Shown in pieces: positions 20,103-47,596 of a DNA stretch of 64,000 bases; the stretch's first letter is position 1, and every line of letters starts with the position of its first letter. Source of the DNA: Haplodiscus bocki (Eukaryota). The notes under the pieces are model-generated. The model was not told the origin of the DNA. It made no database searches and was given only the letters and a program-made list of their open reading frames with translations. Position numbers and translations under genes: made by a program. The DNA is taken from contig OZ296652.1 of the NCBI GenBank assembly GCA_965655095.1, forward strand, positions 54,064,001-54,128,000, given 5' to 3'.

Positions 20103-20144
20103 GAAGAAGAAGAAGAAGAAGAAGAAGAAGAAGAAGAAGAAGAA
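20103..20144. repeat. (GAA)14 microsatellite
   Basis: Perfect trinucleotide run. Confidence 0.98.
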
Positions 20145-22451: not shown

Positions 22452-22741
22452 CGAATAGCCTTTGCCCATCGACAATTACCTACTGGCTTGTCTGGTGGCC
22501 CAAGTCTTCCATTCAAATCCAGGGGCCATATTGAAGACACCTTATTACACCTTCATGCACGACGAAATTGTAGAAGATATATTCACCAAGTTCTGTGCTG
22601 TTCAATGTACCAATGCCATTATTCCGCTGGAAAAGAAACCGTGAATATTGTTGGTACTAGAACCAAAAAGCCACGCAGATCTATCATGGGTTTATTCATA
22701 CAATTGTTTTTCCGGAAAATCAAGTCCCGAAGTTGCAGATG
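22452..22741 (+). pseudogene. First coding exon: signal-peptide-like segment plus PAN/apple-like Cys motif
   Basis: Acceptor tttcag at 22451, donor g|gtaag at 22742. The frame from TTG 22462 reads (L)PIDNYLLACLVAQVFHSNPGA...FCAVQCTNAIIPLEKKP*ILLVL...YSYNCFSG...VAD and joins the next exon in phase 1 (G|AG = Glu). There is no in-frame ATG; TTG sits where a start is expected. Confidence 0.6.
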
Positions 22742-22907
22742 GTAAGTTTATTATAGAACTAGATCGTAAAAATTATTCGAATCTCACTTAGAATATCTTT
22801 ATCCTCGCCAAGTTTGAATTTTTTAACAGAAAATAATGAATTGGCGAACTCTTGAAATGCAAAATTTTTCATCATTATTTTTTTTGTGATTCTAAAATTA
22901 AATTTAG

Positions 22908-23132
22908 AGCCTGCTAAAGCTAACTTTGCGATCCGTTTTTCATACTTGTTTACGTCAAGATATGTTCGTTTGAAAGCATCGGATGTAATTTGTGATTCAC
23001 CAGGTGATTCAATATGGCCGATGTACGCCCGGATTTCTACCTTTGCTGTTTACCCTACACAAGAGAACCAGCTCTTTCGGGTGTATACTGAAACAGAAGA
23101 TGCAGATCACGGGATCACAAAGGCTGATAATG
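22908..23132 (+). pseudogene. Exon 2 of the Ig/LU gene
   Basis: aatttag| acceptor, |gttagc donor, open phase 1-1 exon EPAKANFAIRF...GITKADN. Confidence 0.7.
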
Positions 23133-23543
23133 GTTAGCAACAATTTTTGACTCATTGGTTTCTTGCGCTAGAGATTGAGAGCTCGAATCCAAGTTGCGTA
23201 TTCTTTGATGTTCTTCTCTCCTTTCTGCGATGATTTGTCTGGCAAGTGTTGACGAAGCGCAGCCTCGCTTTCATGCGAAAAACTGAAGTGCAAGTCTTAT
23301 CTTTCAAATATTTGATTTCATATTTTACTAATAATTATCATTACGAACTTTGATTTTTCTTGTTGCAAGTTTTTGTTTCTTTGGAGACTTGATTTAAAAA
23401 TTTGGTTGTTGAAGTGCATCCCTCTAACAATATTTGAAGAAGCTTCTTATCAAACCCGATTGGTTGCTGGTGGTATTTGATGTACACAATATCTAGAATC
23501 ATGCTAGTAAGAATCTCCATGAAGCTAGTTGAGATTTTTTCAG

Positions 23544-23804
23544 ATGATGTTCCACCAAATGCCAATGTGAGAATGGAATCATGCCGGGAAAATCCTTCGC
23601 TGTGTGGAGTTGAAAATGTTAGTTGACTATGACTTTGCTAGGTTTGCACAATTGTTCCTAAATTGAGTGACAAATTTGTTTGCAGGTACTCTGCGATTTT
23701 GCCAGGTATAATAATGCTTCTTCCTTTTCCTTGAGTAATTCGACTTCTTTACTGAAATTCGTGATTATTTCTAGGTTTCCCGGCCAATGTTTCGTGCGGA
23801 ACGG
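23544..23804 (+). pseudogene. Three small exons (74, 20, 30 nt) encoding most of an EGF-like domain
   Basis: Exons 23544-23617, 23686-23705 and 23775-23804 are separated by 68- and 69-nt GT-AG introns. Spliced product SCRENPSLCGVENVLCDFARFPGQC[+1 T]SCGTG joins TLSAYSEC of the next exon to give a 6-Cys EGF pattern. Confidence 0.65.
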
Positions 23805-24199
23805 GTAAGTTACTTTTGCAATGTCTATTTATCAAAAGAATGTAGCTTCTATGATATCTTTGAAATCAAAGTATATTAATTGCAATTTTGTACTAAACAG
23901 CCAGCTGTCGATCAAAGTTGCGGATACGCGAATACAATAAAAAATGACAGAGATTCTAGAATTACCTAGGATTTCTTTTTGTTGTTGGGGAAAAACGAAA
24001 ACCATTGTTTTGAAATACATTCAAAGCAATTTCCATCGTTACCTAACACATGGGAACTTTTGACAAACTCTTTGAGAAAAAAGAGAACAGTATATTTTTG
24101 TTTCCACAAGGGACGGAGATCCGATGCTGGTAACAAATAATTGGCTTGAAAAGTTGATTGTAAGTAGCTTTTGTTTCGTTCAATTTTTTCACGAGTCAA

Positions 24200-24520
24200 A
24201 CTGTCACAACTTGGGCATGCCGTTTGCACTGTTCCAGAGGAGTCTAACATACAATGGATATTTTGTTCCCAAGAAGGCAGAAGGTGCAGAAGCTGAAGGA
24301 ATCTTGACACTGAGAGGCTCAATTGATGGGGACATAACTCAGAGCACTCTAACTGTAGCAGTAATTCCTACAACTGAATCTCAGCTAGAGGGACTAGCAA
24401 CGAGTTTGAAGGACTCGTTGGATGGTCGCAGAAGTTTGATCAGCCCGCTTGTGAAGAAATAAATGTTTGTCAAGTGTCAACAAAAATGGAACCTTTCACC
24501 TTTCCCTGGGCCATATGACA
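24200..24520 (+). mobile_element. Degraded Ty3/Gypsy RT-connection fragment inside an intron
   Basis: ORF 24124 contains GMPF-ALFQR, YNGY, PTTESQL-EGLA...LISPLVKK, resembling MPFGL..FQR / YLGH / PTT..L..FLGL...PL..L. It lies between two phase-linked EGF exons. Confidence 0.5.
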
Positions 24521-24687
24521 AAAATACAAACACTTCAGAAAATTTATTTGTCTCAAAACCTCGAAATTTTACAAAATAAGATTACTAACTTTCGATTTCT
24601 TTGATTCTATTTTACGCGAAAAATTCATGTGGTTTTTCAGAGTTGTCCTCTGTGATCAATTCAATAGATGTTGTTTCTTGGGTTTAG

Positions 24688-25634
24688 GCACTTTGTCAGC
24701 CTACTCTGAATGCTGAGGAATTCATCCTTTTCGCCTGTCTTTACAATCCAGTGATCCTCAGTCTTTCATTCTCTGTCCTGTTACAAATAAAACCTCCGGT
24801 GATGTCCCCACGATAAGCCTTCAAAGCAAAACTATCGAAATTGACCTTGAATCCATGTACCCCCATTCAATCTCCTGTCAGTTCACTTGCGTAAAAATGG
24901 TCCCTATTCATATTGAGTTCTACCTAGATGGAGTGAAACAAGTTGAGTTTGATGTCCTGCCTGGGGGTAGAACGATGCCCAGAAGTTTTTGGCAAATAGG
25001 CGATGATGTTGATGATCCGGGGCGAATCAAAGTACAGTATGCCTGAGAAACAGAAGAGGTTGCGTATTGATGTTTCTTCAATTCTTCGAAAAACTACCAT
25101 AGTTTTGAAAAACGTAATAGCGAACAGTAATAAAAAAACTAAGTAGTTTAATTTCCATTAGCTTCAGTGGAGAAATAAAACCTTTAGTTTTTTGAAGAGG
25201 GACTTGAAATTCTCGAATGTTTAGATTTTGTTCTGCTAATTCACAACATTGGCATCCAGATGGACAATCATTTACATTGATAATTTATCGATTGTTACAA
25301 AAAATTCACTCAACATTTTTTATCAGTGTCCTATTTGCTTACTTTTCTTGCTTGCAGGACTTCAGCTGTACAATCACTGCTTCATACAAAAAAGTTTCTA
25401 AAGAAGAAGCGTCAGTTTATCTGGGACGAATGGTAGCTAGTTCATACACTCATTCCATGAACTACCGAGCAACTAGTTCACCTGCAATGATGATCCAAAT
25501 GGCTCCTCAACTGCATCTCAGACTTAATGGTCCTAAGTACCAGGAAGTCACTTACCTGGACGGAACCTTCAGTCTCAATTGCAAATTTCAGACGGGAATA
25601 CGAAATGGCAGCAAATATACTCATGCTTTCAAAA
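24688..25634 (+). pseudogene. Two exons (24688-25058, 25358-25634): end of EGF, first Ig domain, start of second
   Basis: ISCQF...IEFYLDG...IKVQYA*ETEE|DFSCTIT across a phase-0 junction, then FSLNCKF. In-frame TGA at 24714 and 25044. Confidence 0.8.
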
Positions 25635-28329
25635 GTTAGTCCTGCTTATTTTTCTACTTTAAATTCTTGATTGCCATATAATTTTTTTCGTCCACGTCCG
25701 TTTATACTCTCTGTAGGAAAAAGCACAAAAGTAAGCGTTTTGCTGTCTTCTATAATCTTCCGCCCTTATTTATATCATGGAAGGAAAATAATCCTCTCGC
25801 TTCGTTTCTTACGTAAACTTGCCAATTACGAGGCAAATTTCTTACCACTAAATTGTAGTAAATTGACCACAGAATTCAACTTGAATCGAACTTTTTGCAA
25901 AAACACGTCCTTTTGACCAAAAATCGATTAAAACAAACAATCATTTTTCCAATGAGAGGCTTGAAATTTTACCGCAGAATCATCATGATAACTATTTTTC
26001 GGAATAAGGTGTTTTTAAAACAAAAATTTGGATTTGTTGAGGAAAATATTTTCAAACGTTCGCTTTCCTTTGTTTCTTTCAACGCTTTTCGCCTTTCTAC
26101 CAATTTTGGGTTGTGGAAAATATCCCGATTCTTGACGGGCAACTGTTTTTATTGTTTTTTTTTAAAAAAAATAGGCAAATGCTACTTGAGATTTATGTAT
26201 GAATGTGGAGGGGAACAATTTTGTTCCCCTCCACATTCATACATAAATCTCGAGGTTGCAGGATCAGTGAAGATACAGTGGGTGACCGCAAGTTTGGATC
26301 AATATAGATTAAAAAAGCGAGAAACTTTCCTTATTTCCATAAAAATTGCAGTTTTCAGAAAAAAGTTTCAGTGACTAAAATTTCACAAAATTTCACGGCG
26401 AATATCAAGATGTCTCTCTTCTGGTAATCTCTTTTTTTTTGGTCTGAGTTTTTTGCGCACTCCATTTTTTCACGTTCATTGAATGTTGAAATTCAATTCG
26501 ACAGAGAAATGTTCAGTCAATTTTAACCATATAGGGCACCCAATATCAATATTTCAATTATTGAAGTCTTCCAGATTTTTCAATCTTGAAAATTTTTGTG
26601 GAAATAGCTCGTCAGCAACGGTTCGGCAGAACATTTTTCTTTGTGAAAATTCAATCTTTGATCTAAACGAATTTAATTTTCTTCATGTCTCAATGAAACA
26701 TTTTGCGCAAAACGTGTTAATATTGAAAAAACTGAAGAAGACTTGATTATTTGAATTTATGATATTCATTGCCCTCTATGTTTAGTTGATTGAGTTTTTC
26801 TCTGTTAAAATTCAAAATTGACTGAGAATGACAAAAATTGAGTGATCGAATAAGTCGGACCAAAACAAAAAGATTTCGAAAATGAAACATTTTGAGATTC
26901 CTAGTATAACTTCATGAAACTTTTGCCGCAAAACATTTTTCCGAATCAACTTTTATACGAAAATAATTACAATCTCTTGTTTTCATGAGTGCACTTTAAC
27001 CGATCCACATTTCCGTTCACTCATGGTATCTCCGTCAGTCCAAAAAGGTATATCTAAGCTTTCCGCATATTACAGCATCAGGACGCAAACAGAAATGTGT
27101 TCACGATTCCGGGGAAAAGGGAACACATAATACGGAAGTTTTGAAAACTCAAGTTTCTTGTCATTATTAGCCATACTAGTAATTTTTAGATGGCGTTTTC
27201 CTAAAGTAAAAAGGACGACTATTGCAGTGAAAAAAATAGCTATTTTTTTCCTGCGACATCAGACTAACTTTAAATTGGATCATTTTTGACAAAAATGTTC
27301 AAATAGGAGGTTCTGTTGCTACGACTTTTTACCATACCATCTAAAACTTCTTCAATCGAAAAAAAGTTTGTGATACTCTGGATACACTGGAAAAAATTTT
27401 TGCGATACCCCATCTCTTTTACCAAATTCTTCTGAAAACATGAATAACAAAAAGTCTCCAACTTCGTGATAGCCCCTGCTTTTGCATGTAATGGAAAAAT
27501 TTCCAAAAATGCCAGCACCACAAACTTCTACGGAATTATTTTTTTGATAATAACAAAAATTTTTCAGAAGGTGAGTTCGTAAAATTTTAACTACAATTTT
27601 CATGTCGGCGCTTAAGTCAAAGGATCACAAGCTTGACTTACAATGTTTTTTGATCCGAGAATCCGAAAACATTGATATAAAAACATTTTGAAGAAAACTT
27701 TAAGTTCTTCCGAAGGGCAACTTACATCAAACTAGAATGTTAGTTTTTGGCGAAAAGCACCCATATGACGTGACCGGTTATTAGTCTGACCAAAAATGGA
27801 AAAAATACACTCGTGTCAAAAAACATTTTTTTTGTCCTTCCTTTAACTACGCCTTTTGTAATTATCATAGCAAAACGTGTTAAATCGCCCTGGACGGCCA
27901 CAAAAACGTTCAGTATTAGCATAGTAAAAACTTCAAACACTTCCTTTACGTCAAAAAAAATTATTTACGTAGAATGTTAACCGAGAATTAAGTAAGTTGA
28001 CAACCTTTTCAAAAAATCTGATTTTCAGGTAATCAAGAGAATTGCTTAGTTCCATATCAAAATTCTCACAGGCATTTGTGGCTGACTGATATACAATTTG
28101 CACCAATTTTCGTCTTCCCTCGTGATAATGCAGTAAATTGTAACCGAATTGTAACTGATTTAGAAAAAACTGTTCTTTAAAAAAACCTCTTTGTCAAAAA
28201 TAGGGAAATACTTGCATGAAGTTGAAATCTAATTTCTTTATCGAAGTTTTACAGTATTTTCATTCACTTACTCCTTCCGCCTTTGGTATCCAGACTTTAA
28301 GTCAAAGTATACTGCAGTAAAATGATCAA

Positions 28330-29500
28330 ATTCAAACTTTGTTCAAAACATCAAAAACTTGATTGGCCGAAAATGCTAAAAAGTGTTTTGATCAACGGTT
28401 CTGCGCAATTTTCGAGCTCAGTTTTTGCAATAAACACATTCTGGAATTGATCTATCAATATTCCAATCAACACTTTTCCTTTTTCTAGGAGCATTGACTG
28501 ATAAATATTTCAATGTTTGCAGCTTTCATTGGACTTTTGATTGGCCCAAAATGCCAAAATTGCTTTTAGTATTGGCTTTTCGCGATTATCAAACTTGATT
28601 TTCACCTGAAGTACAGGCTTGAGTATCTCCATCAAAACCCGAATCAGCAAATTTCTTAATGTGAAAGTTTTTCCGAATCAACCACCAGTGATTTTGCATC
28701 AGAATTCTGAAAGCCTGAAAATGGCAATAGTGGCTGATATTTTCCAATTTGAGTGATAACACAACTGAATTTTCGCCATGACTACCGGCTGGACTAAATT
28801 TGTCAAGGTGCCAACCAATGTTTTTCTTCCTGGTAGATATTTTTATAAGAACTATTACCAACTTTGCGTCTTGCGTCGGAATTCTCGAAGCACATAGGTG
28901 TCATAATATGCTGTTAGTGTTGACTTTCACTTAAAATCGAACTCTTTTTTTGACATTTTTTTTCTTCCAACAAGGTGCCAATCAACAGTTTCTCATTTTT
29001 AGAAGTAGTTTTTTCACTGCCATCGCCACCTTTCGGTCTTTCATCAGAAATTTAGTGGAAAGAAAATGCCAGGATGTGCATTTAGTAAGGATTTCTGCGA
29101 AAAATAAATTCAATTTAGACCACATCTCTAGGATGGATTACATCTATCAAGGCCATTATCATCAGTTTGATACCTTTGGGAGCAGTTTCAGGTGAACCTT
29201 CATCGATTTTGCTTCTTGCGTCGGAATCCTCTCAGGCTGAAAGTGCCAAAAGATATTATTACCTTTAATTTTCCGCGACAGTGAAACCCAATTTTTGCCT
29301 AAAATACCGGCTTGTTTATATCAAAGAAAATCCCAGTCACCAGTTGTCTGCTTTTAGAATCACTGTCAGTTAAACCGGTGTCACCATTTTTGCGTCGTAA
29401 ATTGATGTCCTCATAGGCCGAGAATGCCAAAGTTTCCTATCAGAACTTTAGTTTAGCGATACTAAACTTAAATTGAATTTCTTTCTTGAAAAAATCGGGG
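28330..29500. repeat. Degenerate ~175-bp tandem array (second family) within the 5.8 kb intron
   Basis: GGCCGAAAATGCCAAA-like motif near 28365, 28543, 28714, 29235, 29417; TTGCGTCGGAAT at ~28870 and ~29216. Confidence 0.6.
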
Positions 29501-31411
29501 GAAAATTGTGATGCAATGATTGTGAAACACCAAAAATTGACCGTTCATAGCTTTTTGTTCGTGAACTACTCAAATTAGTTTAGCACTTGCTTTCGAGCGT
29601 GATTGCAGAATCGTACTTGATTTTTTCTCCGTTCGCAAGTACACAAAGTGAGGTGGGACAGTCTAAGGAGCTGGGTTTTTTCCTGGGTGTGACTGCGTCA
29701 AAGTACACTCGTTTAAGTATACGGAAGTGAAGTCAATCATTCTGTTATTGAGCTGCAAAAATTAGAGTTTTCAAACTATCTCTAATCCACATCAACTTCC
29801 CAAATTCGTACAATAAGAAATGACCCGCAGCTTCTAGGAAACACTGGGCTGGTCAGATCCCTATTTGAGCGTTTATAGTGTAATTAAGGTTCCTTTGCAT
29901 AATTTTCACTTCCTTTTATCATCCTGTAAACTCCAGTAAATCTAACAAGCCGTGAAATTTTTCGATACTTTCTCTTGTATTTAGGTAGATTGCTTTTTGT
30001 CCGCCCGACTGATCTTCTTAGCTGTGAAGCACAAGGAAATTCGCCTTGTTTCAAAATCTTCGATTCTTTTTGAGTTGCTATCTTTGCGTTGATTTTGTTG
30101 TTTCACTCTAGAAAGTCAGTTAGACAGTCAGTGTCCGTAAAATGGACCTCTCAGAGGGCTTTAGGCACATTTTTGTGGCAAATAGTAGAGAGGAAGCAAT
30201 AGTCGTGCAGCGGGGCGACGATAGAGGGTGTAACGAGTCTTGAACTGCGGCAAAAGAGTTCTGCCGTTTCATTTTTTGCTCAACCTAGTTTTCTGTCATT
30301 TTCCTCACACTAATATTTTTGGTATGATATCACTGATTTATCCACAGGCCCACATCATTAGTCAAAGTGCTCGAAAGATTTTCCTTCCCAAAAAAAAACA
30401 GAAATTAGTTTTCAATAGCAAAATGTGAAAAAAAATAGTTCAACAAATTTTGTGTTAGAGTGTTTTCATTTTTGTTTTTTTTTTGTAGATCATCATTTTG
30501 TTTAGTTTGCTCATTTTCGGGCTTCTTTTATTGGTATGCAATTTGCTATTACTCGCGACAGCAAAAAGGCTAACTTTTGTTGCTGTCCGCTCTATGTTGA
30601 TCGTATTTCTAAATATATATAATTGTTATATTATCATTTATAGAGAAACAAACACTTCTTCTGCAGTGATGCTTCAAACATGTCATTAATTGACACGTTC
30701 CATGAGGAAATTCCTTTCCGTGACATTTGCAATTGGAGGCATAGAAAAAGTAGATGCATTCATTTTACTAGTATTTGATTTTTTTCTTGTGATGTCAGTA
30801 GAGGTGGTGGTCAGACGTGGTAGACTGTTGCAGATGAATATCAAGACGCCCGGCTACCACTGGATTTTTCTGACCTTTAATTTTGTTTAATATGCGTTTT
30901 AGGTAGAAAAAAAGCATTATACACCAAAATTGCTGTTTTCTTTATTTTAGAAAAGTTTTATTTTCGAAAACTTTTCTAATAAAAAAAACTTTAAATTTCG
31001 ATAGAAAAAAAGGCATTATTTAGATTTATCAACCTTTTATACGCATTCTGCAACAAATTTGCTACTTTATATAATTTGAAATTTTTTCGTAAAAATCCAT
31101 TTTTTTCAAAAACCATAAAATTTGGTTGGAAAAAGGCGTTCTGTAGATATATTACTATTTTAGGCGCATGCTAGGACACATTCGTTGTAATTTGCTGCTA
31201 AAAAATTTAGAGTTAAAAATAGTGCAATTTGCCTGAGTTGTGCAATTGGCAAGTAAACGTAAAAACGCACGCAGCCAAAGAAAGATTTTCCTTTCATTTT
31301 ATAAATATGGCAGAAGATAATAAATCAAAAGTTTCCTAACCAAAAATAGGCTCTTAAATGGTTGTGAGTTGTGCATGTTGAAAGTTATAAAGTGATTCTT
31401 TATGGTTGAAG

Positions 31412-31901
31412 GTTTACAAGTTTCCTGGACCAACCCTTCGGAAAAGATTTTGATGAACTGTCGACTGAATCAGGAGATTTCGAACGACCACGCTACTAAC
31501 GAAATGGCCCGGTTCTCAGGTGTTTCGCCTTGTGGGGTTGTTGAAACAGATGAAGGAGCATCTTTGACTTTTATCGACCAAGATACCACACTTTTCCAAC
31601 GAGGGATCTATACTTGTTCTGTTAATGACCGTGCCTTGCAAAGTATTACGAAGACACTCAACGTCTCTGTTGTCAAATTTCCGACAATTCCAGAGGGCGA
31701 AGAAATTAGTTTTATAAACGTGCATTCGGTTGTGAAAACGTTCCAAAGAGGTTGGTCTCATCTTTCGACTGAATCTCTCGAACTGAAGTGGACACTTTTT
31801 GTTGCAGCTGCTAATAGTACTGCTAACATTCTTACCCGCAAACTTCTTGTCCGCGGGTGCAACCTCGAGAGTGCCCTCCGAAACCAATGTTCGCAAAATA
31901 A
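31412..31901 (+). pseudogene. Exon completing Ig domain 2
   Basis: Phase-1 join A|GT gives SLQVSWTNP...GASLTF...RGIYTCSV...TLNVSVV; donor gtaag at 31902. Confidence 0.85.
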
Positions 31902-32500: not shown

Positions 32501-32857
32501 CACTGAAGTTTTGGCTACTTGTGTGCTGAGCTCAGGAGGAAATTCTTGTAGTGGTTACGTATATTATGAAAACAAACAGCATGAAGCAGAACAAAGTATT
32601 CACATTCAAAGAGTTTTTTATTTGAAGAGTATCCAACTCGGATGTTAGCTTAGAATCAACTACAATAAGTTCAGCTCTTGGAATAAACGTCGAGCCTCTC
32701 CTACGCACGTTCATCCTTCGAGGAATTCGAGAAGTTTTCATCTTTGTGCAGTATGTTGAAGACACGTCGGTGGAATCAAACTACGCTGGATATATGTTTC
32801 AGTCGGTGGGATGTGTATTAGAGAATGACCACGTCCAAATTACAGGAACTAAATCAA
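32501..32857 (+). pseudogene. Probable internal exon with a +1 frameshift near 32625
   Basis: ttttag| acceptor is phase 2, matching the previous exon; |gtacgc donor is phase 1, matching the next. The reading switches frame mid-exon (TEVLATCVLSSGG... to RVSNSDVSLES...QITGTKS). Confidence 0.5.
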
Positions 32858-34505: not shown

Positions 34506-34719
34506 TTTCATGACACCACTTGGATATACAAACATAAAATGCTTTCAAACCACAAGTGGTTATTTATAGACCGCAGGTTCTCTTATGTTGAAGCACGGAA
34601 AAGAAAAGGGGTTTCATGACACCACTTGGATATACAAACATAAAATGATTTCAAACCACAAGTGGTTATTTATAGACTGCAGGTTCTCTTATGATGAAGC
34701 ACGGAAAAGAAAAGGGGTT
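34506..34719. repeat. Tandem duplication, 2 x 106 bp
   Basis: CATGACACCACTTGG...GAAAAGGGGTT repeated with period 106 and three substitutions. Confidence 0.95.
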
Positions 34720-35577: not shown

Positions 35578-35787
35578 ATGCAGGCTGGGTGGAGTTGCCA
35601 TCAGAGTGTGACGAAGTGCTGAGTTACTGCATTGATGCTGCAACTCCTCGAAAGTGGTACATTTACGAAGGGACAAGTTCCGTCAAAATGAATATCCACG
35701 CCAACTGTTCAACGTACACACAGAAAGTTGTTGCTTGGACCAATGACATGCGGGCTTCTGGTTTTTGTACTGCTGTACAGGTCTCAA
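35578..35787 (+). pseudogene. Exon encoding the first half of a CD2/SLAM-like V domain
   Basis: ttgcag| acceptor, |gtgag donor, phase 1-1; VLSYC...RKWYIY; continues as NASLEF...FEGIYRL in the next exon. Confidence 0.75.
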
Positions 35788-36228: not shown

Positions 36229-38029
36229 ATGACGTTTCTAGCAATTGTATCTTCAAGGTACACGAAAACGCCTCATTAGAGTTTCTACATCCTACAGATG
36301 ACCGGTTCGAAGGTATCTACAGACTTGACCTTTCTAGTAACTGTGTTGACATACCAGACCAAAGTGTTGCTAGCTTAATTTTTTCTGTTCATATTCTGGT
36401 AGTTAAATCTCCGACCATCTCCAATCCTGTGAATGACATCATCGGGCGCGAAGACCAAAATGCAGTTCTCAACTGTCCTTTCACGGGTGGTCTTCGAATG
36501 TACGGTTTTGAAACGTACAAGTTTGAGCTTAGCACGCCCGCAGGATTGAAACTTTGGTATGATGGTGGCACTGACGATCAAGCGTGTAAATATGAGGAGG
36601 ATTCGACTGGGATTCCTTCAGGACTCGAGCCTTTGCCTCTGATAAATCTTGGCATATCTGAAGACTCGTTGTTGGACATTACAAATGATCAAGTATCCAG
36701 TGATATTTTGACTAAACAAGTTTCATTTTCTGTTAAAACCTCAAAAATTGGATCGGCGTCCAATGGTTTGAATGTTGTGACGTGCAAAGTAACTGATCCG
36801 GAAGGCGGGACTGCTGAAAAAGAGCTTCAGGTCCGAATTGTTGATGAAGCTTATCTGTATATGTAGCTTTTGGAAACAGAAATTAACATTTACAAAAACT
36901 CACAAAGCACTCTGACAGTTGGTTGCTGGTACTTTGGCTTCTCTTCAACGTCTCAGCAGAACATGAAACTGCAAAAAGACGGAGCTATTTTGGCGAATTG
37001 GTTTGTGATAGGATCAGACAATTTACAAAACCCGGTGGGGATAGCACTCTCAAACACCCAGGGAAGGTGTGAAATACAATTTACTAATGTAAATCCGAGT
37101 ATTACGGGACATTACATTATCTCACTTTATACAATAATGGACGAATCTTCCTCGGATACTGTGACCGATTCTGAAATATCTGAAATCCAATTCCACGTGA
37201 ATCTTTTCAGCACTATAGAAGTTCATCAACTCGAGCAAATCTCAGCTACGGAAAGAATACCGATAACTTTGTTTTGTTCATTTACTGGAGCGAATCCAAG
37301 AACCAACAAACTTGTAGAGTGGCGCAAATGTCCGGCAAAAAATCAAGAATGCGATACACTTCTTTACCGAATTAATACATACGCTGAAAGTTTTGATGGA
37401 ACTCTTTTTCACAATATGCGAGCATATGTGTCAAAATCTAACCTTATGTCAAATCACAAATCTCCTCTTGATATTTTCGCAAAAGAATTGACTGATTTGG
37501 GGTATTATGAATGCACAGTTTGGGACATGGATACTTATGGCAATAAAATTATGCAAACCGATGAGAACAGAAATATCTTTTTACTACAAGTCATCCCGTT
37601 TCGTCCGTACATCAAAAATATTTCACCTGAAGTGTTAACTTTGTCTCCTCAAACCCCGCGGAGCCAAAAAATATCTTGTGTTTTTGAGATGAGTTGAGGT
37701 TATTATGACTTTTTACCAGTGGTCAAGTGGAAGCTGGGATCCGGGCACACAATTTTGAGTTACCCCCTAAATGCAACATGTGATTCTTTTAATGAATCGG
37801 TTGTATATGGCATTAGTTCTGAATTAGAGCATTTCTCCCCGAAGCAATTCGGCGTAACTTGTACCAATTACGCAAGCTCAGTTCTTGCGATGACGTCATA
37901 CTTGGAGCTGGGAACACAAAACTATATCTGCCAACTACAAAATGACACTGATGTTAGTTTACACCGCCTGAGGTTACCTTTCAAACATCTCCATGAATGG
38001 GCGGATTTCTTGTGTTACAATCCCCCACT
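36229..38029 (+). pseudogene. 1.8 kb exon with about 4.5 tandem Ig domains, interrupted by in-frame TAG and TGA
   Basis: ORFs 36429, 36870 and 37719 share one frame, separated only by TAG 36864 and TGA 37695. Motifs: AVLNC..LWY..VVTC; TVGC..NWF..GHYI; TLFC..VEWRK..DLGYYEC; ISC..VKWK..NYIC. Confidence 0.9.
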
Positions 38030-39580: not shown

Positions 39581-39921
39581 CCCCCACTTGTAGTAACGAA
39601 CATTGTACCCACATTTAGCGGTACTTCAGTGAATTCTCACTCCAATACCTTAGAGTTAAGCCATTACCCCGATTATTATCTTAGGAATCCATTATTGCGT
39701 GTGGGGTTGTAAATTCCAGGGAATGACAGATAAAATGTGAAAGCTAAGTATAGTCTCGGGTGCTATGGTAGCTCAGTCTATGATATTTTTACCCGGCTTT
39801 TCTCAGTATTATGGAGGCTTATCTTACAACTTTAATCATTTCCTATATTTTTTTCCAGAATTAATCATTTTTGAAATTTAGTTTTAAAATGACTAAATGA
39901 ACTGTTTTTTATCTTGCGTAG

Positions 39922-40070
39922 GTGTGGGATTGGCAAGTTTCAAGCTTTGAGCAATTGTGCGTTGATACTTCGATCTCTCTGGTTCAAGTGCGCCGAGGAA
40001 GAACTGAAACTTTGAGATGTTCTTATTCTACAGCCAAAGCTGTAGTGGAAATCGTCTGTTGGCGTTTGAG
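39922..40070 (+). pseudogene. Exon starting an Ig V-set domain (not in ORF track)
   Basis: gcgtag| acceptor, |gtagt donor; reads VWDWQ...VQVRRGRTETLRCSYSTAKAVVEIVCWRL; phase-2 continuation at 40166 (RTSVLLST...EYSDFLRG). Confidence 0.75.
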
Positions 40071-43000
40071 GTAGTAATTTTGTTCTTGCTTCTTTTTCAC
40101 AAGAATCAGATCGTGATCAGTGTTAAACTGATTTAAAGTTTTAAGCTTAAAGTTCTATTGCTCAGAACATCTGTACTTCTTAGCACGATGAGCATAAAAC
40201 TGCTAACTGGCGATGAATTCAAAGAATACTCCGATTTTCTTAGAGGCTGGAATAGTGTACTGATATCAAAAACGATAAAGATCATACTCCTAAAAATGAT
40301 GTGGTGACCCGTTCACCTTTAAATTTAACCCTTGGTTTTTAATTTTTTCATCTCGATCTTGACGGTTGACCTGAGCAAGTTACGTTCTTCGCTTCTTTTG
40401 AGAATTGGAAATACTCAAATGAATTCCTAACTCCTTCTAATTCTTCCACAGAATTTAGGTTTTGTCATCTGTTGTCTGGTTGTTTATCCGCTCCACTGTA
40501 AAATTATGAAGTCAAGTCAGATAGTGGTTAAGGGTGATGGTGAAACCTCAGCGCGGTTCAGTAACAAAAAAGCGGAGAAGTCGGCGCTGCAAACATTTGT
40601 AGGGGAACTTTTGACATTTTGATTAATTTTGGTTTGTCGGAAAATTTCATTATTGTTAGAAAAATTTGTCTTACTATGCCTAAAAATCGTATAAAATTAC
40701 ACACTACCGTGATAATTCTGTCCAAAAACTTTTTGATATTTCTTTTTTGTACAAACTTAGGTATACGTGAACGGGAGGTATAACGTTTCATTTTCAGAAA
40801 TTGAGGAAAAAGTTTCATAAAAGTTTTGATCACGCATTTAAGGGGGCTGATAAACGCCGCCTGAATTTCTTAAGGCTGTGTTAATTCTGTTACGTGAACA
40901 ATATCAGAAAACATGAAACTTTGAGTTTTCACTGTTTGGGCAATGAATAAATAGAGCACCTAAAGCTTGAATATTTCACTTGCTTGTTTTTAGTTGGAGC
41001 CGAATTCCTAGATTCTTGGCTAATAAATCGCGCTACATTGAAATATTATGAAAAAAGATTATCAAACCGGGAATTTCCAAGCAATTACATTCGTCAGTTC
41101 GAAGGTATTAAAAATGAAAAGAAACAAAGGGCCCCTGCAATGGGTTGGCTTGTTTCACGCTCCGATTAAAAAGGGTAAAGATTGACTGAAAACAATCACC
41201 CTGATTTAGAAAGCAGTTTTGTTCAGTGTTGGTTGACGGAAATCAGAGCTGTTTCAAGAAATAAACGCTGATTTCTTATGATCTAAAAATTGTTTTTGAG
41301 TGCTGATGAAAGCTGAATCAGCGCTGTCTACAGATTTCCATGTAACGTAGAGGGCTGAGTCAGTGCTGAAGCAGTGCTCGCAATCGCTATCATGTTTTTT
41401 CCAGAGCTAATCAACTCTTAGTTCTCTGAGATTTAAATCCAGAAAAAATCTCGCATCTTTAAAGGTACATATTTTTTTCGGTTTTCATACTTCATTTTCT
41501 TCCATTTTGCTCTTAAACCTGATAACTGGCCCAAATTTGGGTTTTTTTTGTCATATCCATTAGTTTTATTCCAGCACGTATAGTCTCTTAACACTTGGAG
41601 ACAATTATTTTTGTGCCGCGGTTCTTTTTCATTTTTTTTTCGTTTGCCGTGTTGTTGTTTCTAAGTTAAATTTATCCTAACTTGTGTCCTAATTTTTGTC
41701 TTTTTCAGCATATTTAGCATCTCATATTTCGTGAACATTTCAGAACTCATGAAACGGTTCCGTTGCAATTTTTTGTGAAAAAACTTGTACCAAATGTTAA
41801 CGTCAATAGCTATTTTCAGGTTGCAAAAGAAATATTGAGCATTTAGGGTAATTTCACTGTTCTTTAGTTCAGTTTTCACACTTCTTTAGGTTGATTTTTT
41901 TTGTTCAGTATCAATATTTTGTCACCTAGTTGATGCAATTTTCTGATTTTTGCAGAAACGCGCCAAATCTCTAATCAACCTCATAGTAATTTTTTTTGTG
42001 TTATGGCAATTTTGATACGTTTTTTGAGGAGAAAAATTGAAAGCTGGGCAAATTTTGGCTTCTTTGGCGATAATGGTCAAAATAAAAAAGTTTTTGGCCC
42101 ATAGGGCTCCCAGTCACGTAAACTTTGTGTACACTTAATTTTGTGTACACATAGACTCCAGTCTATGACATACTAAAGTTTAGTTGTCTTGCCAAAATTT
42201 TTCGATAGGTTTTCGAAAGAAACATGAAAATTGAGGTTTTTTGGGTACTTTCATGATTTTTTTCTAAATCAGTTCTGTTACTCTTGGACCTATGTCTCCA
42301 AATCACCTGCATTTTGCAAATGCATCACAAAGATACTCCAATAAATTTTTATCACATACAAATTGTTGATTGCGGTCCAAAATATTTCTGCAATGGTTTT
42401 TTTGCGGAAGAAATTTAAAAATCTGCAAGTTTACAAAGACATAGCGGGAAGACTCTAATACAATCAGCAATGAGTCACACACTACAATAATTTGCGCTCC
42501 GAATTACATTCGATAGGTTTTTTGCGCAAGGAGCTTGAAAATCAACAATTTCTTGGCTAATTTAAGGATGTATGTCATATCCGAAGTCCTGCTTACTGTT
42601 ACATAGTTCTTCAAATGACCCAAATATTGCATAAAAAAAGTGTCACCAATCAATCTTATGCAAAGTTTTCGCTGTGGTCCAACAAAAATTTGCGCTGGTT
42701 TTTTGTGCGGTAAAAGATTTTATGAAATGATTACTTTTTGAGAGTTTCCTTCACAAAAAAATTCCTGATGGCCTATTTGTTCTTCGAACCCATTGGAACG
42801 CTAAAGATTGTATTATAAAAGCACGCAGGTGCACGTGATTAAAGTTGGTGCCAATCCCAAATACTTTGCGCTATGTTTGTAATGATTTCTTCGATGTCTG
42901 CGAAAAATCTCATTCTGACGTTCTTTTTTTTTCGGTAATGGCTAAATTGCTGCAATTTTGCTCATATAGAATAAAGACTGACTGTGTAAGCGTGGGGTGT

Positions 43001-43545
43001 TGATGTTGCCCGAAAGTGGTTGATGTTGAAGTATACTTGCCACCTTTTTTGACCAAAATTACAAAAGAAGATTCTATTTTTAGGATAAAAATTGTTCAGA
43101 TCATGATTTTTTTATTTCACTAATTGTTCGAACAGAAAAAATGGGGTGTTCTTATTTGTTTTTGTTTAAAAGTGTGAACCTAAGCTTCTTAGTGTCTATG
43201 TTTTTAGCATTTTTAAAATTTGGAGTTTGGAGTTTGCATTTTGGAGTTTGCGTTTTGATATGGTTTATGGAAATCGAAAAATGCAGACAAATCTGCAAAA
43301 AGAAACATTAAGCTCGGAAACTAAAAAGTCCGAGTTTTCTTTTGGTTGAAAACTATTGTTTGTCTCTGAGCTCCCGGAGACAGAAAATATCACGGGGCAA
43401 GGTTGCCTAATGTTCGTTTTCATTCAGTACTCCACCATTTTTGTTAGTTCTCAAAAGGCTTATCAAGTTTCTTCAAAGTTTGAAATGAATATATGACAAA
43501 ATATTCTGAAACGGTAGTCTAAAACTGTTTGTCTTCATATTTCAG

Positions 43546-43970
43546 GCTAAATTTGTTGAACTCAAAGTACATGAATGGGTAGGAATAGCTTGAGGCTCAA
43601 ATTTTTGAGCATTAATGGAAACAGCGTTTCAGAAAAACTGTGGACGATGATGATGAAATCATTTTCGCCTACATTGCAAATGCCGATCAAGACCACCTGT
43701 TCGAGTTTGGTTACGTCATCGATTCCACAAGGATTGCAGTTGCACGGCTTTCCCAGGATGCAAGTTTCACGTTGCGAGATGTTACCTTAGAAGACTCAGC
43801 TATGTATAGATGTGTAGTTTACGAAGTAGAGAGTGAAAGATATCAAGTGTACGATTTCAAAGATATTTATCTGCAGGAGGGAGTGTGCAACTTTGGTCAA
43901 TCTAAAGCAGCTTCAGGTTGAGGAAATTTTGGACACTGCTCAGACCAAGGAACTTGCTTTTGTAAAATGG
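43546..43970 (+). pseudogene. Exon with last Ig V domain and start of a tenascin-type EGF
   Basis: AKFVELKVHEWVGIA*GSN[+1]FEH*WKQ...DASFTLRDVTLEDSAMYRCVV...GVCNFGQSKAASG*GNFGHCSDQGTCFCK. Confidence 0.85.
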
Positions 43971-44959
43971 TTGGTTGTTTTCATCCAAAGTTGAATTGCA
44001 CGAGAACACTGGCAGTTTATAAATGATTGGATCTGACAAGATATCAGCAAATATCTTAAAGAATATAGCGCTCCAGGAAAAACACCTAAAAGTTGAAAAC
44101 AAAAAATAGTAGTGTCTATTTATTAAATTTATCCCAGTACAAAATATCACAAAAGAGTTCAAGTAAAACTCAGAAGTAGTTTTCGAAGTTCTCAATATGT
44201 TCAATGAAGATCATAAAAATCTCTTTTCGATGGGCATTAATGTGCCAATAAGTACCTGTAATACCAGGGTTGAGCGCCAATTGATAAAAAGTTATTCTAT
44301 GATGCTCACATCGATGAAATTGATTTCCATCGATTCTCCATCGATTAGAATTGACTATATTTGCATGTGCCCAAAAACCAATCAGAATGCAATATTCTTT
44401 CTCGTTATTTCTTTAACTTTTAATAACGTAGTTCCGAATATAAAATCACTGAAAAATTAAGATTTTTGGCTGAAATTGTCGACTAACATTAGGTCTATTT
44501 TGCATTTTAGGCCAAATGAAATGTAAACACGCGTTTTTGTTGCCTCTTGAACAGCATCATGATTTAGGTGGTAGACATTTACAATTTTTATAGGTTGGCT
44601 GCATCCGAAAGTTTTACAAGTACTTATTACAAAAAATTGCAAAAACTCAGTTTTTACACTACTACGGTGTTCCAAAAGTGCCATCTTGTTGCAAAAGAAC
44701 ATCGCATTGATCCAAAGTGCGATCTTATTACTATGGAAATGTCGTAGAGAATCCATCCCGAGGATGAAACCCTGAGATTCAATAATCCATCGAAAGAAAT
44801 CAATGATTTTTACAGCTTTTGTCTGTGAGATTTCTCAGTTTTACTTATGCAATGAAGCCTTTTGGTGTTGTTGACTGGCCCACAAGTTAAAAATTCGAGG
44901 GAGTGCTTCCTTGAGAGTAAAAATTTGGAAAAGAATAATTATCATAAATCGATTTAAAT

Positions 44960-46119
44960 GGCTCTACGACAATTCGGACCAAAGACGAATTCGGACCGAA
45001 AACCAGATTCGGACCAAAGACAAATTCGGACCCAATTTTGAAATTCGGCCCAAATTATTTCGCTAAATAACTTAATTACTTAATTATATTATAAGCCTAA
45101 CTCAATTTATTTTTTGAAAGCATACCAATTTTGCAAACAGTTCTGATATAAATTAACCGGGCGGCATTAACTTTATTCTTTGGGGGCGGTAGATATCGCA
45201 GTAAATATCCCAAAAGCTAGACCTCCAGAGTAACTTTTGAAGCAACAAACTGAGAACGGCCAGAATCGGTCCTGTCCGTAAGTCTCAAAAGACTCGTCGA
45301 GGATTTTTTGTCTTACATAAAGTTTCTGAGAAGTTTTTTGATATTGCAAAGGGGGTATGACGATGTTGAGGATTAGTATTTTCCGCCCATAGTTTAACAT
45401 AGAAGAAAAATAATTCACTCGCCACATGCGTTCTTTTATGTAAAATTGTCAACTGCACGTTTCTGGAAAGTTTTTCTACGTGGGAAGATGTAACAAAAAT
45501 TCTGTGGAATCCATTTTTTTAAAATGTACTTCTAACGAAATTTTTGTCTTGAATGCATTTTGGCAAAATTGGAAAAAGTTAGAGAATAGGATCTTCTCAG
45601 GGCAATTTCGCGAAATTTTAACTTTGAAAAATTAATGTGCATTTGCTTCGAAACGCTTTTCCGGACGCAATTTTGCTGTTTCCAAAATCTTTCTAATTAG
45701 AAATTTTTAGTTTCCAAATAGAATCCCTTGGTCCCTCTAAAATGCACTTTTAACAAAGTCAGAAGAAAACGAAGATCCGTGCGGTAGCCAGGCATCTCGT
45801 TTTAATTTGTCTTTAACGCATTTTGACACAAAAATGGAAAACGGAAATTTTTGGTAGATTTCAAGGGATTGCGAAATGCCAAAGTTCTGAAACTTGCAAG
45901 ATCAAATTTCCTGTGTAATATTTTTATTCGTATTCGTTCACACTTCTAATTGGTTCTAATTGGCGATAATTACTATTATGAGCCACGATTGTGGAAGATT
46001 TTATAAACGCTGCTAATTACCACTAATTAGAGGTAATTAAAATTTTGGGCCCAATTTGTGTTTGGTCCGAATCTGTCTCTGGTCCGAATTTGGTATTTGG
46101 TCCGAATTGTCGCATCACC
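44960..46119. mobile_element. Mutator-like non-autonomous element with 9-bp TSD
   Basis: TIRs GGCTCTACGACAATTCGGACCAAA / GGTGATGCGACAATTCGGACCAAA (reverse complement), ATTCGGACC subrepeats, TSD GATTTAAAT at 44951-44959 and 46120-46128. Confidence 0.9.
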
Positions 46120-46304
46120 GATTTAAATTGATTGTGCATCCATTTCAATGGCAAGAAAATTGCCATTGAAAATCAATCTCAAATCGATTCTTCATCAATT
46201 CAGATTGACGGCGAAAAGATTTTTTATCCAATAATATCAATGAGAGTTAAACTCGGGATCCATGAGTGGGGTGAGAGTTAAACTCGGGAACCTTTCCTTT
46301 GAAG

Positions 46305-46634
46305 GTTTCTCTTGGGACAACAAAGTCGGCCTTTGCGTCAGTTGCAAAGCAGATCCAACTATTTGTCCCAGTTCAGCAAAATGCTTGTACGACAGTGAGA
46401 TGAAAAAACACACGTGTTTTTGTGAACGTGGAGAAACATGTTATCACGTGATCATAAATGTGTTCAGTGCTCCTCGGATTCAGACTGCGCTGGTCAAGGA
46501 AATGTTTGTCTTTTACTCTACGGTGGAAGCAGAAAATGTTTCCAAGATTGTACAAGCGATGCTGACTGTAACCAGGGCCAGACGAAGAAAATCTGCGCAA
46601 AGCCACCTAGACTGAGCAATTCGTCTGATATCCG
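46305..46634 (+). pseudogene. Cys-rich exon (EGF/EB-like repeats) with a -1 frameshift at ~46434
   Basis: GFSWDNKVGLCVSCKADPTICPSSAKC...TCFCERGE switches frame to MLSRDHKCVQCSSDSDC...CFQDCTSDADC...KIC; one extra A in the AAA run restores continuity. Confidence 0.8.
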
Positions 46635-47127
46635 GTGATTTTCCGCTTTTCAAGAAAATGAAATTATCTACTTAACTAAACTAAAGGAGTTACCTCAGAA
46701 ATCTTGAGTTTTGAAGCAATTGCCATCTCCTAGGGAGTAGCTTGGAATATAATGTTTGTCTCATGACCCTACAGCGACCCTCAGAGATAAATGATGACAT
46801 TCTTGTTGAAAATTACTTTTTTCACTTGTGGTTGGCGCGTTACAAAAAGTACGTAAACAATGACTTTCTGTAGCGTTCACTGCTGTACTTTTTGGGTGAA
46901 ATCTTACTACAAATTAGAGCAACTTTGGCCATTAGTGACTTGATCTAGCATGGTTTTACTGTTTTGGAGAAGTTTCAAAATTGGATATCAAGTTATTAAA
47001 GTTTGACTAGAGTTACAATTTTATCGGTATCCAGTAGAGCGAGGAATGAACTGACAATTCTTCAAGTCCCCGTTTTGGTTTTGTTTTTTTTCTTGTGTTT
47101 TTGCTTCTGAACAAATTTTGTTCTTGG

Positions 47128-47596
47128 AGTGTGTTCTTGCATGGGCAACTTCTTAGAAGACGCAGATGGGACTTGTTATCCGAGGGCTTTGCTCATTTCC
47201 TGTTTCGTTTGCGTCAACGACGAACCTGATTGTGCCATGCAACAGAATTCATTTGCAAGTTATTTCGAAACATGTCCAGAACCAACGCAAGTGTGTGACA
47301 CTCAAATGCATGCATTCAACAGCTCTATTAAAGGAGACAGTGTAGACCTATCACAAGCGACTATCACCTACAATCGATCTTGTTCTGAAAAAATGCAAAG
47401 AACATGTAATTTCAAGTCTGGTCAATGCTACTACAAAGAAGATCAACTGTTGTGTGTCCAATGCTGCTTGCGCAACTTTTGCAATGACAACCTAATCACG
47501 GAAACCCATGCCTCTTCTTGGATTCAGAGTTCAGTCCAGAAATATGAAAGCGGCCCTACAATTATTTCATTGCTAATTTTTTGGACTTTCAAGTAA
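47128..47596 (+). pseudogene. Terminal exon: end of EGF, Ly6/uPAR (three-finger) domain, GPI signal
   Basis: CSCMGNF...GTC, then SCFVC...C...C...C...RSC...C...C...CVQCCLRNFCN (typical LU CxxC...CC-x4-CN ends), Ser-rich omega region and hydrophobic tail IISLLIFWTF, stop TAA. The phase-correct acceptor reads ttcttgg rather than ttcttag. Confidence 0.85.

What the first reader, a model, noticed from the sequence alone, without database searches (positions are those of the whole stretch)
22452..47596. Hidden ~2,000-aa mosaic receptor: PAN-like + EGF + >=9 Ig + EGF/Cys-rich + Ly6/uPAR + GPI
Seen: scattered ORF fragments join through phase-compatible GT-AG junctions into one gene, with Ig and EGF motifs completed across introns, ending in a three-finger LU domain and GPI signal. 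Established: LU domains usually occur alone or in tandem in small GPI proteins (Ly6, CD59, uPAR, Drosophila Quiver/Sleepless), and Ig-EGF combinations usually lack LU. Inference: I do not recognise this domain combination from any characterised protein. It could represent a lineage-specific adhesion, allorecognition or symbiont-recognition family, with intact paralogues likely elsewhere in the genome.
Basis: partly seen in the sequence, partly recalled or inferred. Interest (0 to 1): 0.85.

Follow-up and report, generated by a model that had tools for sequence, protein, structure and literature searches.

The report
Decayed multi-Ig/EGF/Ly6 surface-protein gene
The scattered exons are real, and in a related species they join into an intact 1,790-residue secreted or surface protein with immunoglobulin, EGF-like and a terminal Ly6/uPAR-like domain. 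In this genome the gene is a decaying pseudogene with six premature stops, three frameshifts and one lost splice site.

Summary
The + strand of window 23.5-47.6 kb carries 16-17 exons. All of them are conserved, in the same order, in a syntenic locus of a related species (ENA ERZ25074608). There they splice through GT-AG introns only into one open 5,373-nt CDS of 1,790 aa. That protein has a signal-peptide-like start, a long beta-rich region, two Pfam-significant V-set Ig domains, EGF-like and Cys-rich modules, and a C-terminal 12-Cys Ly6/uPAR-type motif ending CC-x4-CN.

The window copy is dead. Read with the orthologue's exon boundaries it has six in-frame stops (24460, 24714, 25044, 36864, 37695, 43919). 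It has frameshifting length changes in exons C, K and L and a lost acceptor (AG to GG) before the LU exon. It has no start codon or signal peptide at the homologous place.

A second haplotype (ERZ26859043, about 2% divergent) shares four lesions and adds four of its own. dN/dS between the two haplotypes is 0.70, against 0.26 between the two intact orthologue copies. Genomic reads confirm the 42-48 kb sequence.

Not supported or not shown: the PAN-like start, nine or more Ig domains, the GPI signal, intact paralogues. LU plus 1-3 Ig architectures were already reported in molluscs and arthropods (PMC13719153).

The parts
22452..22750 (+).
   Evidence: No Pfam hit at E<=1. No conservation in 16 kb of orthologous upstream sequence.
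22970..23132 (+). Homologue of the orthologue's first coding exon (Z2). The 3' part is conserved (PMYARIST...). There is no ATG or signal peptide in the window. The 5' limit is uncertain.
   Evidence: tblastn E 0.006, colinear. Alignment and donor AATG|GT are conserved. The orthologue has ATG plus MRCYGFVKDIFLLVVVPVTFCATA.
23544..23617 (+). Exon A (Cys-rich, C-x6-C)
   Evidence: AG/GT sites, weak conservation with E 0.008, same phase as the orthologue.
23686..23705 (+). Exon A2, a 20-nt micro-exon (VLCDFA)
   Evidence: The orthologue has a 20-nt exon, VQCDFV, at the homologous place with AG/GT sites.
23775..23804 (+). Exon B, a 30-nt micro-exon (FPGQCFVRNG)
   Evidence: 88% nt and 91% aa identity to the orthologue.
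24111..24159 (+). Exon B2
   Evidence: Conserved WLEKLI, with donor and acceptor aligned.
24238..24473 (+). Exon C. LESION: a 4-nt insertion creates TAA at 24460-62 and a +1 frameshift before the conserved donor.
24688..25058 (+). Exon D. LESIONS: TGA 24714-16 (orthologue has TGC, Cys) and TGA 25044-46 (orthologue has AGG). The second depends on the donor chosen.
25358..25634 (+). Exon E (first half of an Ig-like domain, ...LNC...); open
   Evidence: 58% aa identity, sites conserved.
31412..31901 (+). Exon F (VSW...YTC completes the Ig-like domain); open in the window. 230 nt (31498-31727) are deleted in the other haplotype, L002.
   Evidence: (Ig_2 E 0.01).
32501..32550 (+). Exon G1
   Evidence: The donor is shifted 1 nt, compensated at G2.
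32630..32857 (+). Exon G2
35578..35787 (+). Exon H (Cys-rich)
36229..37952 (+). Exon I, 1,724 nt, several Ig-like domains. LESIONS: TAG 36864-66 (orthologue has CGC; L002 has CAG) and TGA 37695-97 (orthologue has AAA; shared with L002).
   Evidence: V-set scores 22.4 bits in the window and 31.3 bits in the orthologue.
39922..40070 (+). Exon J (first half of a V-set Ig domain, ...LRCSY...CWRLR)
43633..43969 (+). Exon K (second half of the V-set Ig domain plus the start of EGF). LESIONS: TGA 43919-21 at an EGF cysteine (orthologue has TGC, L005 has TGT), and a 1-nt deletion at about 43966 that shifts the donor phase (shared with L005).
   Evidence: The sequence is confirmed by DNA contigs.
44960..46119 (.). 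High-copy MITE-like element inserted in the K-L intron; absent from the other haplotype
46305..46634 (+). Exon L (EGF-like and Cys-rich). LESION: net -13 nt at about 46430 causes a frameshift (shared with L005 and with sample S2).
47128..47596 (+). Exon N: CxC...C half-motif, LU-type 12-Cys domain (CFVC...CC-x4-CN), short hydrophobic tail, stop at 47594-96. LESION: the acceptor AG is GG at 47126-27. The only AG nearby puts the exon out of frame (shared with L005 and S2).

Best explanation
The locus is a unitary pseudogene: the decaying remnant of a lineage-restricted gene for a large extracellular protein. The ancestral gene survives intact in a related species. It has 17 exons and encodes about 1,790 aa. 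The order of parts is an N-terminal signal peptide, a long beta-rich region with at least two bona fide V-set Ig domains and probably several more Ig-like ones, one canonical EGF plus further EGF-like/Cys-rich modules, and a C-terminal Ly6/uPAR-type three-finger-like module. It has no transmembrane segment.

The orthologue's product is most likely a secreted or lipid-anchored cell-surface binding or adhesion protein; this is inference from its domain content. In the lineage of the window, selection on the gene was relaxed before the two sampled haplotypes split. Both haplotypes now carry shared and private stops, frameshifts, deletions and a broken splice acceptor, so no full-length protein can be made.
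For: Shown.
- Colinear conservation of every exon with the syntenic locus L001/L004. That locus also holds the same downstream AIG1 GTPase gene.
- The orthologue's 17 exons all have AG/GT sites and give one 5,373-nt ORF with a single terminal stop and a signal-like N-terminus.
- A second orthologue copy, L006, is also intact over exons G1-N. Its pN/pS against L001 is 0.26.
- With homologous boundaries the window has stops at 24460, 24714, 25044, 36864, 37695 and 43919. Exon lengths differ from the orthologue by non-multiples of 3 in C, K and L. The N acceptor is GG.
- Haplotype L002/L005 is 2-3% divergent. It shares TGA 37695, the K 1-nt deletion, the L frameshift and the N acceptor loss. It adds a 230-nt deletion in F, a 2-nt deletion in I, a 61-nt deletion in K and a 4-nt insertion in N.
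- Window versus L002 gives 17 synonymous and 42 nonsynonymous changes, ratio 0.70. This is compatible with neutrality (p 0.21) and rejects 0.26 (p 3e-4).
- Genomic contigs of run X1 match 43039-44985 and 46098-47999 without a single difference. A second sample's contigs carry the L frameshift and the N acceptor lesion.
- The shortest introns of the gene are 69-79 nt, so the 27-36-nt intervals around the exon I stops cannot be introns.
- Domain evidence: V-set above Pfam's cut-off twice in the orthologue, QVR (LU clan) at E 0.056 over the full model length, EGF_3 at E 0.051. The LU cysteine pattern matched 0 of 200,000 shuffles. All ten best family-annotated Atlas neighbours of the last exon are LU families, at scores of only 0.78-0.81.
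Against: - No RNA data could be obtained for either species, so the orthologue's splicing and expression are inferred from phase and ORF logic only.
- Lesions in exons C and D (24460, 24714, 25044) rest on the single assembly. No second haplotype or reads were laid there.
- The stop at 25044 could be skipped by an upstream GT in the same phase that both species share.
- Exons E-J are lesion-free apart from exon I's two stops, so a truncated or non-coding transcript cannot be excluded.
- Both AlphaFold runs failed (pLDDT 32 and 34). The Ig count and the three-finger fold are therefore not structurally verified.
- The function of the intact protein is untested.
Confidence: 0.85

Rival explanations
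1. The window gene is still functional, using lineage-specific splice sites or isoforms that bypass the lesions, or making a shorter protein from the intact middle exons.
For: 15 of 16 acceptors and all donors are still canonical. Exons E, F, G1, G2, H and J are open. One donor/acceptor shift at G1/G2 is compensated. The stop at 25044 can be avoided by an in-phase GT four codons upstream.
Against: The two stops inside the 1.7-kb exon I cannot be spliced out: that would need 27-36-nt introns, and the gene's shortest are 69-79 nt. There is no start codon or signal peptide at the homologous exon. dN/dS is 0.70 between haplotypes, and the other haplotype has independent large deletions.
Confidence: 0.07
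2. The lesions are artefacts, or null alleles of one individual. An intact allele or paralogue exists in this species.
For: TAG 36864 and TGA 43919 are private to the window haplotype. The species' full genome could not be searched with tblastn.
Against: - Four lesions are shared by two haplotypes from different assemblies and, for two of them, by a second sample.
- DNA contigs reproduce the window exactly.
- Depth over exons K, L and N equals single-copy flanks, so there is no copy at 90% identity or more.
- Protein searches with exon I, exon K and the LU exon found no further ORF in the same-species assembly ERZ26859043.
Confidence: 0.06
3. The LU exon is a separate small Ly6-type gene lying downstream of an Ig/EGF gene, not the last exon of it.
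For: Typical LU genes are small three-exon genes (PMC6600238). No transcript evidence is available.
Against: - In the orthologue the L donor (2 extra nt) and N acceptor (1 nt) complete a codon, and the frame stays open from the ATG to the stop after the LU domain.
- Exon L has no stop before its donor.
- Exon N starts in the middle of a cysteine motif (VCTC...), with no ATG or signal peptide of its own. It lies only 320 nt (orthologue) to 493 nt (window) downstream of exon L.
- The LU domain is in one exon entered in phase 2. That is unlike stand-alone LU genes, which have two exons and phase-1 introns.
Confidence: 0.05

Closest known systems
Invertebrate three-finger (Ly6/uPAR) proteins with added Ig-like domains (molluscs, arthropods; Acta Naturae 2026, PMC13719153)
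   Same: LU-type domain combined with Ig-like domains in one predicted extracellular protein; found by genome mining; lineage-restricted.
   Different: Those have one to three Ig-like domains and no EGF modules are mentioned. Here the orthologue is about 1,790 aa with a much longer Ig-like region plus EGF-like/Cys-rich modules, and the LU module is the last domain. No sequence similarity to any database protein was detectable.
Classical GPI-anchored LU proteins (CD59, Ly6, uPAR, C4.4A, Drosophila Quiver/Sleepless)
   Same: Cysteine pattern C-x2-C ... CC-x4-CN with Asn after the last Cys. The N-terminal C-x2-C-x6-C and C-terminal CC-x4-CN spacings match those I recall for CD59 (from memory, not checked here). 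There is a weak full-length Pfam QVR match and a C-terminal hydrophobic tail.
   Different: 12 Cys rather than 10. The domain is encoded by a single exon entered in phase 2, instead of two exons flanked by phase-1 introns (PMC6600238). It is appended to a giant non-LU protein. The GPI signal is doubtful in the intact orthologue.
Large IgSF cell-adhesion molecules, some GPI-anchored (own knowledge: contactins, NCAM-120, Dscam-like proteins)
   Same: Signal peptide, tandem Ig-type domains, no cytoplasmic signalling domain; plausible adhesion or recognition role.
   Different: No FN3 repeats were detected. The Ig-like domains are too divergent for Pfam apart from two. The membrane-proximal part is EGF plus LU. 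No homology was detected.
TGF-beta/activin receptor ectodomains, GPIHBP1, SP-10 (LU in a non-LU context; PMC6600238)
   Same: Examples of an LU fold embedded in a heterologous protein.
   Different: Those have a single LU at the N-terminus of a kinase receptor, or next to an acidic or other short region. None has Ig or EGF arrays.

Membership tests
Immunoglobulin superfamily (V-set, PF07686) | Profile match above Pfam's gathering score | tested here: met
   Orthologue exon I scores 31.3 bits and exon K 28.9 bits (cut-off 26). The window copies score 22.4 and 21.7 bits, below the cut-off. The two domains resemble each other in hhalign, E 2e-4 over 109 columns.
Immunoglobulin superfamily | Nine or more Ig domains, as claimed | tested here: inconclusive
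   Besides the two V-set domains, about three segments show C...W...Y-x-C by eye. The other segments give no Pfam or internal hhalign signal. The AlphaFold model of exon I was unusable, pLDDT 34.
EGF-like domain | Six cysteines with C-x-C spacing; profile match | tested here: inconclusive
   One canonical six-Cys pattern spans the K/L exons in the orthologue. Pfam EGF_3 reaches only E 0.051, 14 bits against a cut-off of 28.5. In the window one of its cysteine codons is TGA (43919).
Ly6/uPAR (LU) domain | 60-90 residues with 10 plesiotypic cysteines, and an Asn directly after the last Cys that is not glycosylated (PMC6600238) | tested here: met
   A 95-residue stretch with 12 Cys (10 plus one extra pair) ends in CC-x4-CN followed by D. 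It is present in the window and the orthologue. The pattern matched 0 of 200,000 shuffles and occurs once in the six-frame window. The length is slightly above 90.
Ly6/uPAR (LU) domain | Significant profile or sequence match to known LU families | tested here: not met
   Pfam QVR reaches E 0.056, 14.9 bits against a cut-off of 27.3, though over the whole model, 1-86 of 86. There is no hit for the window copy. The PDB profile search found no LU chain. Atlas neighbours are all LU families, but at 0.78-0.81, lead level only.
Ly6/uPAR (LU) domain | Three-finger fold | tested here: inconclusive
   AlphaFold2 on a 4-sequence alignment gave pLDDT 31.7. No fold search was run on it.
Ly6/uPAR (LU) domain | Gene structure: LU encoded by two exons flanked by phase-1 introns (PMC6600238) | tested here: not met
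   The whole LU motif lies in the single last exon N. It is entered with two nucleotides carried over from exon L.
GPI-anchored protein | Small omega-site residues, a polar spacer, then 10-20 hydrophobic residues at the very C-terminus | tested here: inconclusive
   The window tail is ...SGPTIISLLIFWTFK, with 10-11 hydrophobic residues. The orthologue tail is ...LPVFLILRYFATQWNQNDFEF, with 7 hydrophobic residues followed by a polar end. No GPI predictor was available.
PAN/apple domain | Profile match or conserved cysteine core at the N-terminus | tested here: not met
   No Pfam hit at E<=1 in any frame of 22367-23134. The region is not conserved in the orthologous locus.
Unitary (non-processed) pseudogene | Intron-containing copy at the syntenic place of an intact orthologue, with disabling mutations and relaxed constraint | tested here: met
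   Synteny and exon-by-exon colinearity. Six stops, three frameshifts and one lost acceptor. Shared and private lesions in two haplotypes. dN/dS 0.70 against 0.26.

The most novel reading that the evidence does not exclude
The intact orthologue (ERZ25074608 ctg185713 and ctg181010) represents an undescribed class of giant IgSF proteins. In it, a Ly6/uPAR three-finger module, captured as a single terminal exon, sits after EGF modules as the membrane-proximal or lipid-anchoring end of a long Ig array. The gene evolves fast (dN about five times that of its neighbour) and has recently been lost in the window's lineage. That pattern is typical of recognition, immune or gamete-interaction genes.
Probability: 0.4. 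Interest if true: 0.5.

Novelty: new variant of a known kind. Interest (0 to 1): 0.33.

Why it matters
For this genome the result is a correction: there is no hidden 2,000-aa receptor here, only its wreck, and it should be annotated as a pseudogene. The comparison does uncover an intact, previously unannotated gene in a related species. That gene fuses an Ig array, EGF modules and an LU-type module. This extends the recently noted Ig+LU architectures of invertebrates and is a further case of the LU 'proto-module' placed in a heterologous protein by exon shuffling. The pair, intact in one lineage and freshly decayed with datable shared and private lesions in the other, is a clean small example of lineage-specific gene loss in a fast-evolving surface protein. 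No function is known and no experiment has been done, so interest is moderate.

Tried and rejected
1. RNA evidence. The look-up of sequencing runs returned only four genomic DNA runs. Read laying showed continuous exon and intron coverage and no splice joints.
2. AlphaFold2 of the LU exon (pLDDT 31.7) and of exon I (pLDDT 33.7). The alignments were too shallow, so the models were discarded and no fold search was run.
3. Profile search of the LU exon against PDB sequences. It returned only a chance NKG2-D match.
4. Internal-repeat detection. tblastn of the exons against the window found nothing. hhalign between ten segments gave only the two V-set domains as a pair.
5. Tiny introns (27-36 nt) around the two exon I stops. 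Rejected because the gene's shortest introns are 69-79 nt and the orthologue reads straight through with Arg and Lys.
6. A supposed loss of the exon K acceptor. This was my own misreading, corrected: TTTCAG|A is intact.
7. PAN-like N-terminus. No support.
8. Earlier scan notes. None were near this place, and the genome-wide hits concerned EGF genes in Polintons, which are unrelated.
9. Taxon of the genome. It could not be determined with the tools; the Atlas neighbours of the AIG1 gene are spread over phyla.


Full report
**Setting.** The window is AT-rich (about 35% G+C) animal-type DNA with introns, transposon fragments and no assembly gaps. Stop-free + strand segments between 23.5 and 47.6 kb look like exons. 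Pfam sees only sub-threshold V-set matches in two of them and nothing for the last, Cys-rich one.

**Finding relatives.**
- A full HMMER scan of 1.84 billion representative proteins with the longest open piece (36867-37694) returned three true hits only. One is a 617-aa ORF, P0001, at 49% identity. The other two are short ORFs at 84-94% identity.
- Their contigs were fetched.
- L001/L003/L004 are one 670-kb contig of ENA ERZ25074608. I merged them into a 35-kb locus, called ORTH below.
- L006 is a second contig of the same sample, 95-99% identical to ORTH.
- L002/L005 are one 231-kb contig of ERZ26859043. It is 90-98% identical to the window at the nucleotide level, about 2% divergent in exon I. 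This is most simply another haplotype or individual of the window's species.

**The exons are real and form one gene in the orthologue.**
- Every candidate exon of the window has a colinear counterpart in ORTH at 48-68% amino-acid identity. Introns do not align at all.
- The next gene downstream, a single-exon AIG1-type GTPase, is shared at 88% identity.
- Aligning the exon borders shows acceptors and donors at homologous positions and in the same phases.
- Joining the 14 ORTH exons B to N gives one uninterrupted 1,686-codon frame.
- Three upstream exons were added, including a conserved 20-nt micro-exon found in both species and a first exon with ATG.
- The final model has 17 exons, all GT-AG, and a CDS of 5,373 nt = 1,790 aa with a single terminal stop.
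- The N-terminus is signal-peptide-like (MRCYGFVKDIFLLVVVPVTFCATA). There is no internal hydrophobic segment.
- The second copy, L006, is also intact over exons G1-N. It differs at 26 of 1,186 residues and its pN/pS against L001 is 0.26.
The Ig exons and the LU exon are phase-linked in one open frame. Exon N begins in mid-motif without its own start.

**Domain content.**
- In the orthologue, V-set passes Pfam's cut-off in exon I (31.3 bits) and in exon K (28.9 bits).
- Ig_2 (E 0.01), EGF_3 (E 0.051) and QVR, a Ly6 family (E 0.056, full model length), are sub-threshold.
- The domain encoded by J and K is indeed completed across an intron.
- One canonical six-Cys EGF pattern spans K/L.
- The last exon matches an LU pattern: C-x2-C ... 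CC-x4-CN, Asn not glycosylatable, 12 Cys in 95 residues. The pattern occurs once in the six-frame window and in 0 of 200,000 shuffles. It fits the published definition of the LU signature (PMC6600238).
- Atlas neighbours of the last exon are all LU families, but only at lead level. Atlas neighbours of exon I are Ig families.
- I could not verify folds. Both AlphaFold jobs gave pLDDT near 32-34. A PDB profile search and internal hhalign comparisons added nothing beyond the two V-set domains.
- So at least two Ig domains are certain and about five are likely. Nine or more is unproven.
- The PAN-like start (22452-22750) has no Pfam support and no conservation.
- The C-terminal tail is short and differs between the species, so GPI anchoring is open.

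**The window copy is broken.** With orthologue-equivalent boundaries it shows the following.
- A 4-nt insertion makes TAA at 24460 and a +1 shift at the end of exon C.
- TGA at 24714 replaces a Cys codon, and TGA at 25044 replaces an Arg codon, both in exon D. The second is avoidable if an upstream in-phase GT is the real donor.
- TAG at 36864 and TGA at 37695 lie in the 1.7-kb exon I, where the orthologue has Arg and Lys.
- TGA at 43919 replaces an EGF cysteine, and a 1-nt deletion shifts the exon K donor phase.
- A net 13-nt loss frameshifts exon L near 46430.
- The exon N acceptor AG is GG, and the only AG nearby is out of frame.
- There is no ATG or signal peptide at the homologue of the first exon.
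- One apparent donor/acceptor shift at G1/G2 is compensated and is not a lesion.

**The lesions are not artefacts.**
- The four public runs turned out to be genomic DNA: they give continuous coverage of introns and no splice joints.
- Contigs of run X1 match 43039-44985 and 46098-47999 with no difference.
- A second sample (X3) has the same sequence at the L frameshift, the K 1-nt deletion and the N acceptor. For TGA 43919 the X3 contig shows four differences, of which only three are listed. That stop is therefore likely, but not proven, in the second sample.
- The independently assembled haplotype L002/L005 shares TGA 37695, the K deletion, the L frameshift and the N acceptor loss.
- L002/L005 lacks the window's TAG 36864 (it has CAG) and TGA 43919 (it has TGT).
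- L002/L005 has its own damage: 230 nt deleted from exon F, 2 nt from exon I, 61 nt from exon K, and 4 nt inserted in exon N.
- Contig breaks at 43774 and 43834 in three runs fit heterozygosity for the 61-nt deletion. This is inference.

**Selection.**
- Between the window and L002, 17 synonymous and 42 nonsynonymous changes give a ratio of 0.70. This is compatible with neutrality (p 0.21) and incompatible with the 0.26 seen between the intact copies (p 3e-4).
- Window versus ORTH is saturated at synonymous sites (pS 0.73), with pN 0.275. The gene was therefore constrained for most of its history.
- It evolves about five times faster at nonsynonymous sites than the AIG1 neighbour, dN 0.34 against 0.07.

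**No intact paralogue was seen.**
- Searches of 5.8 billion proteins with exon I, the LU exon and exon K found only the loci already described.
- Read depth over exons K, L and N equals that of single-copy flanks.
- No conserved antisense or intronic gene lies in the region.

**Comparison with what is known.**
- LU domains are mostly solitary or tandem, and have been called a 'proto-module' (PMC6600238).
- A 2026 survey of invertebrate genomes lists LU proteins with one to three Ig-like domains in molluscs and arthropods (PMC13719153). The Ig+LU combination is therefore not unprecedented.
- The much larger Ig/EGF/LU arrangement and the single-exon LU module are a new variant.

**Verdict.** What sits in the window is a recently decayed unitary pseudogene of a lineage-restricted Ig/EGF/LU surface-protein gene.

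Noticed in passing
window 44960-46119: A 1.16-kb element with 76-nt terminal inverted repeats made of 17-nt subrepeats. Its word depth is 10^4-10^5, against about 12-30 for the flanks, in all four DNA runs. It is absent from the other haplotype (L005). This looks like a very high-copy MITE-like transposon that is polymorphic for insertion in the K-L intron.
   Followed up: partly
window 52022-53176: A single-exon AIG1/GIMAP-type GTPase ORF (379 aa from the ATG at 52040). It is 88% identical to the syntenic gene in L001 and L006 and strongly constrained (dN 0.069).
   Followed up: partly
window 32550/32630 versus ORTH (L001 8910/8989): At the G1/G2 junction the window's donor lies 1 nt upstream of the orthologue's site and its acceptor 2 nt downstream, at a tandem AGAG acceptor. 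The two shifts compensate each other, so the frame is kept.
   Followed up: yes
L004 10001-12480; L005 1724-7231: A Copia-type (RVT_2/rve) retroelement sits in the orthologue's intron between the 20-nt micro-exon and exon B. The other haplotype of the window's species has a 5.5-kb insertion between window 43074 and 43147.
   Followed up: no
window 20505-21119 (- strand): Reverse-transcriptase-like ORF fragments of a non-LTR retrotransposon lie just upstream of the gene. A (GAA)14 microsatellite lies at 20103-20146.
   Followed up: no
window 34506-34719: A 106-nt unit is duplicated in tandem (97% identity) inside the G2-H intron.
   Followed up: no
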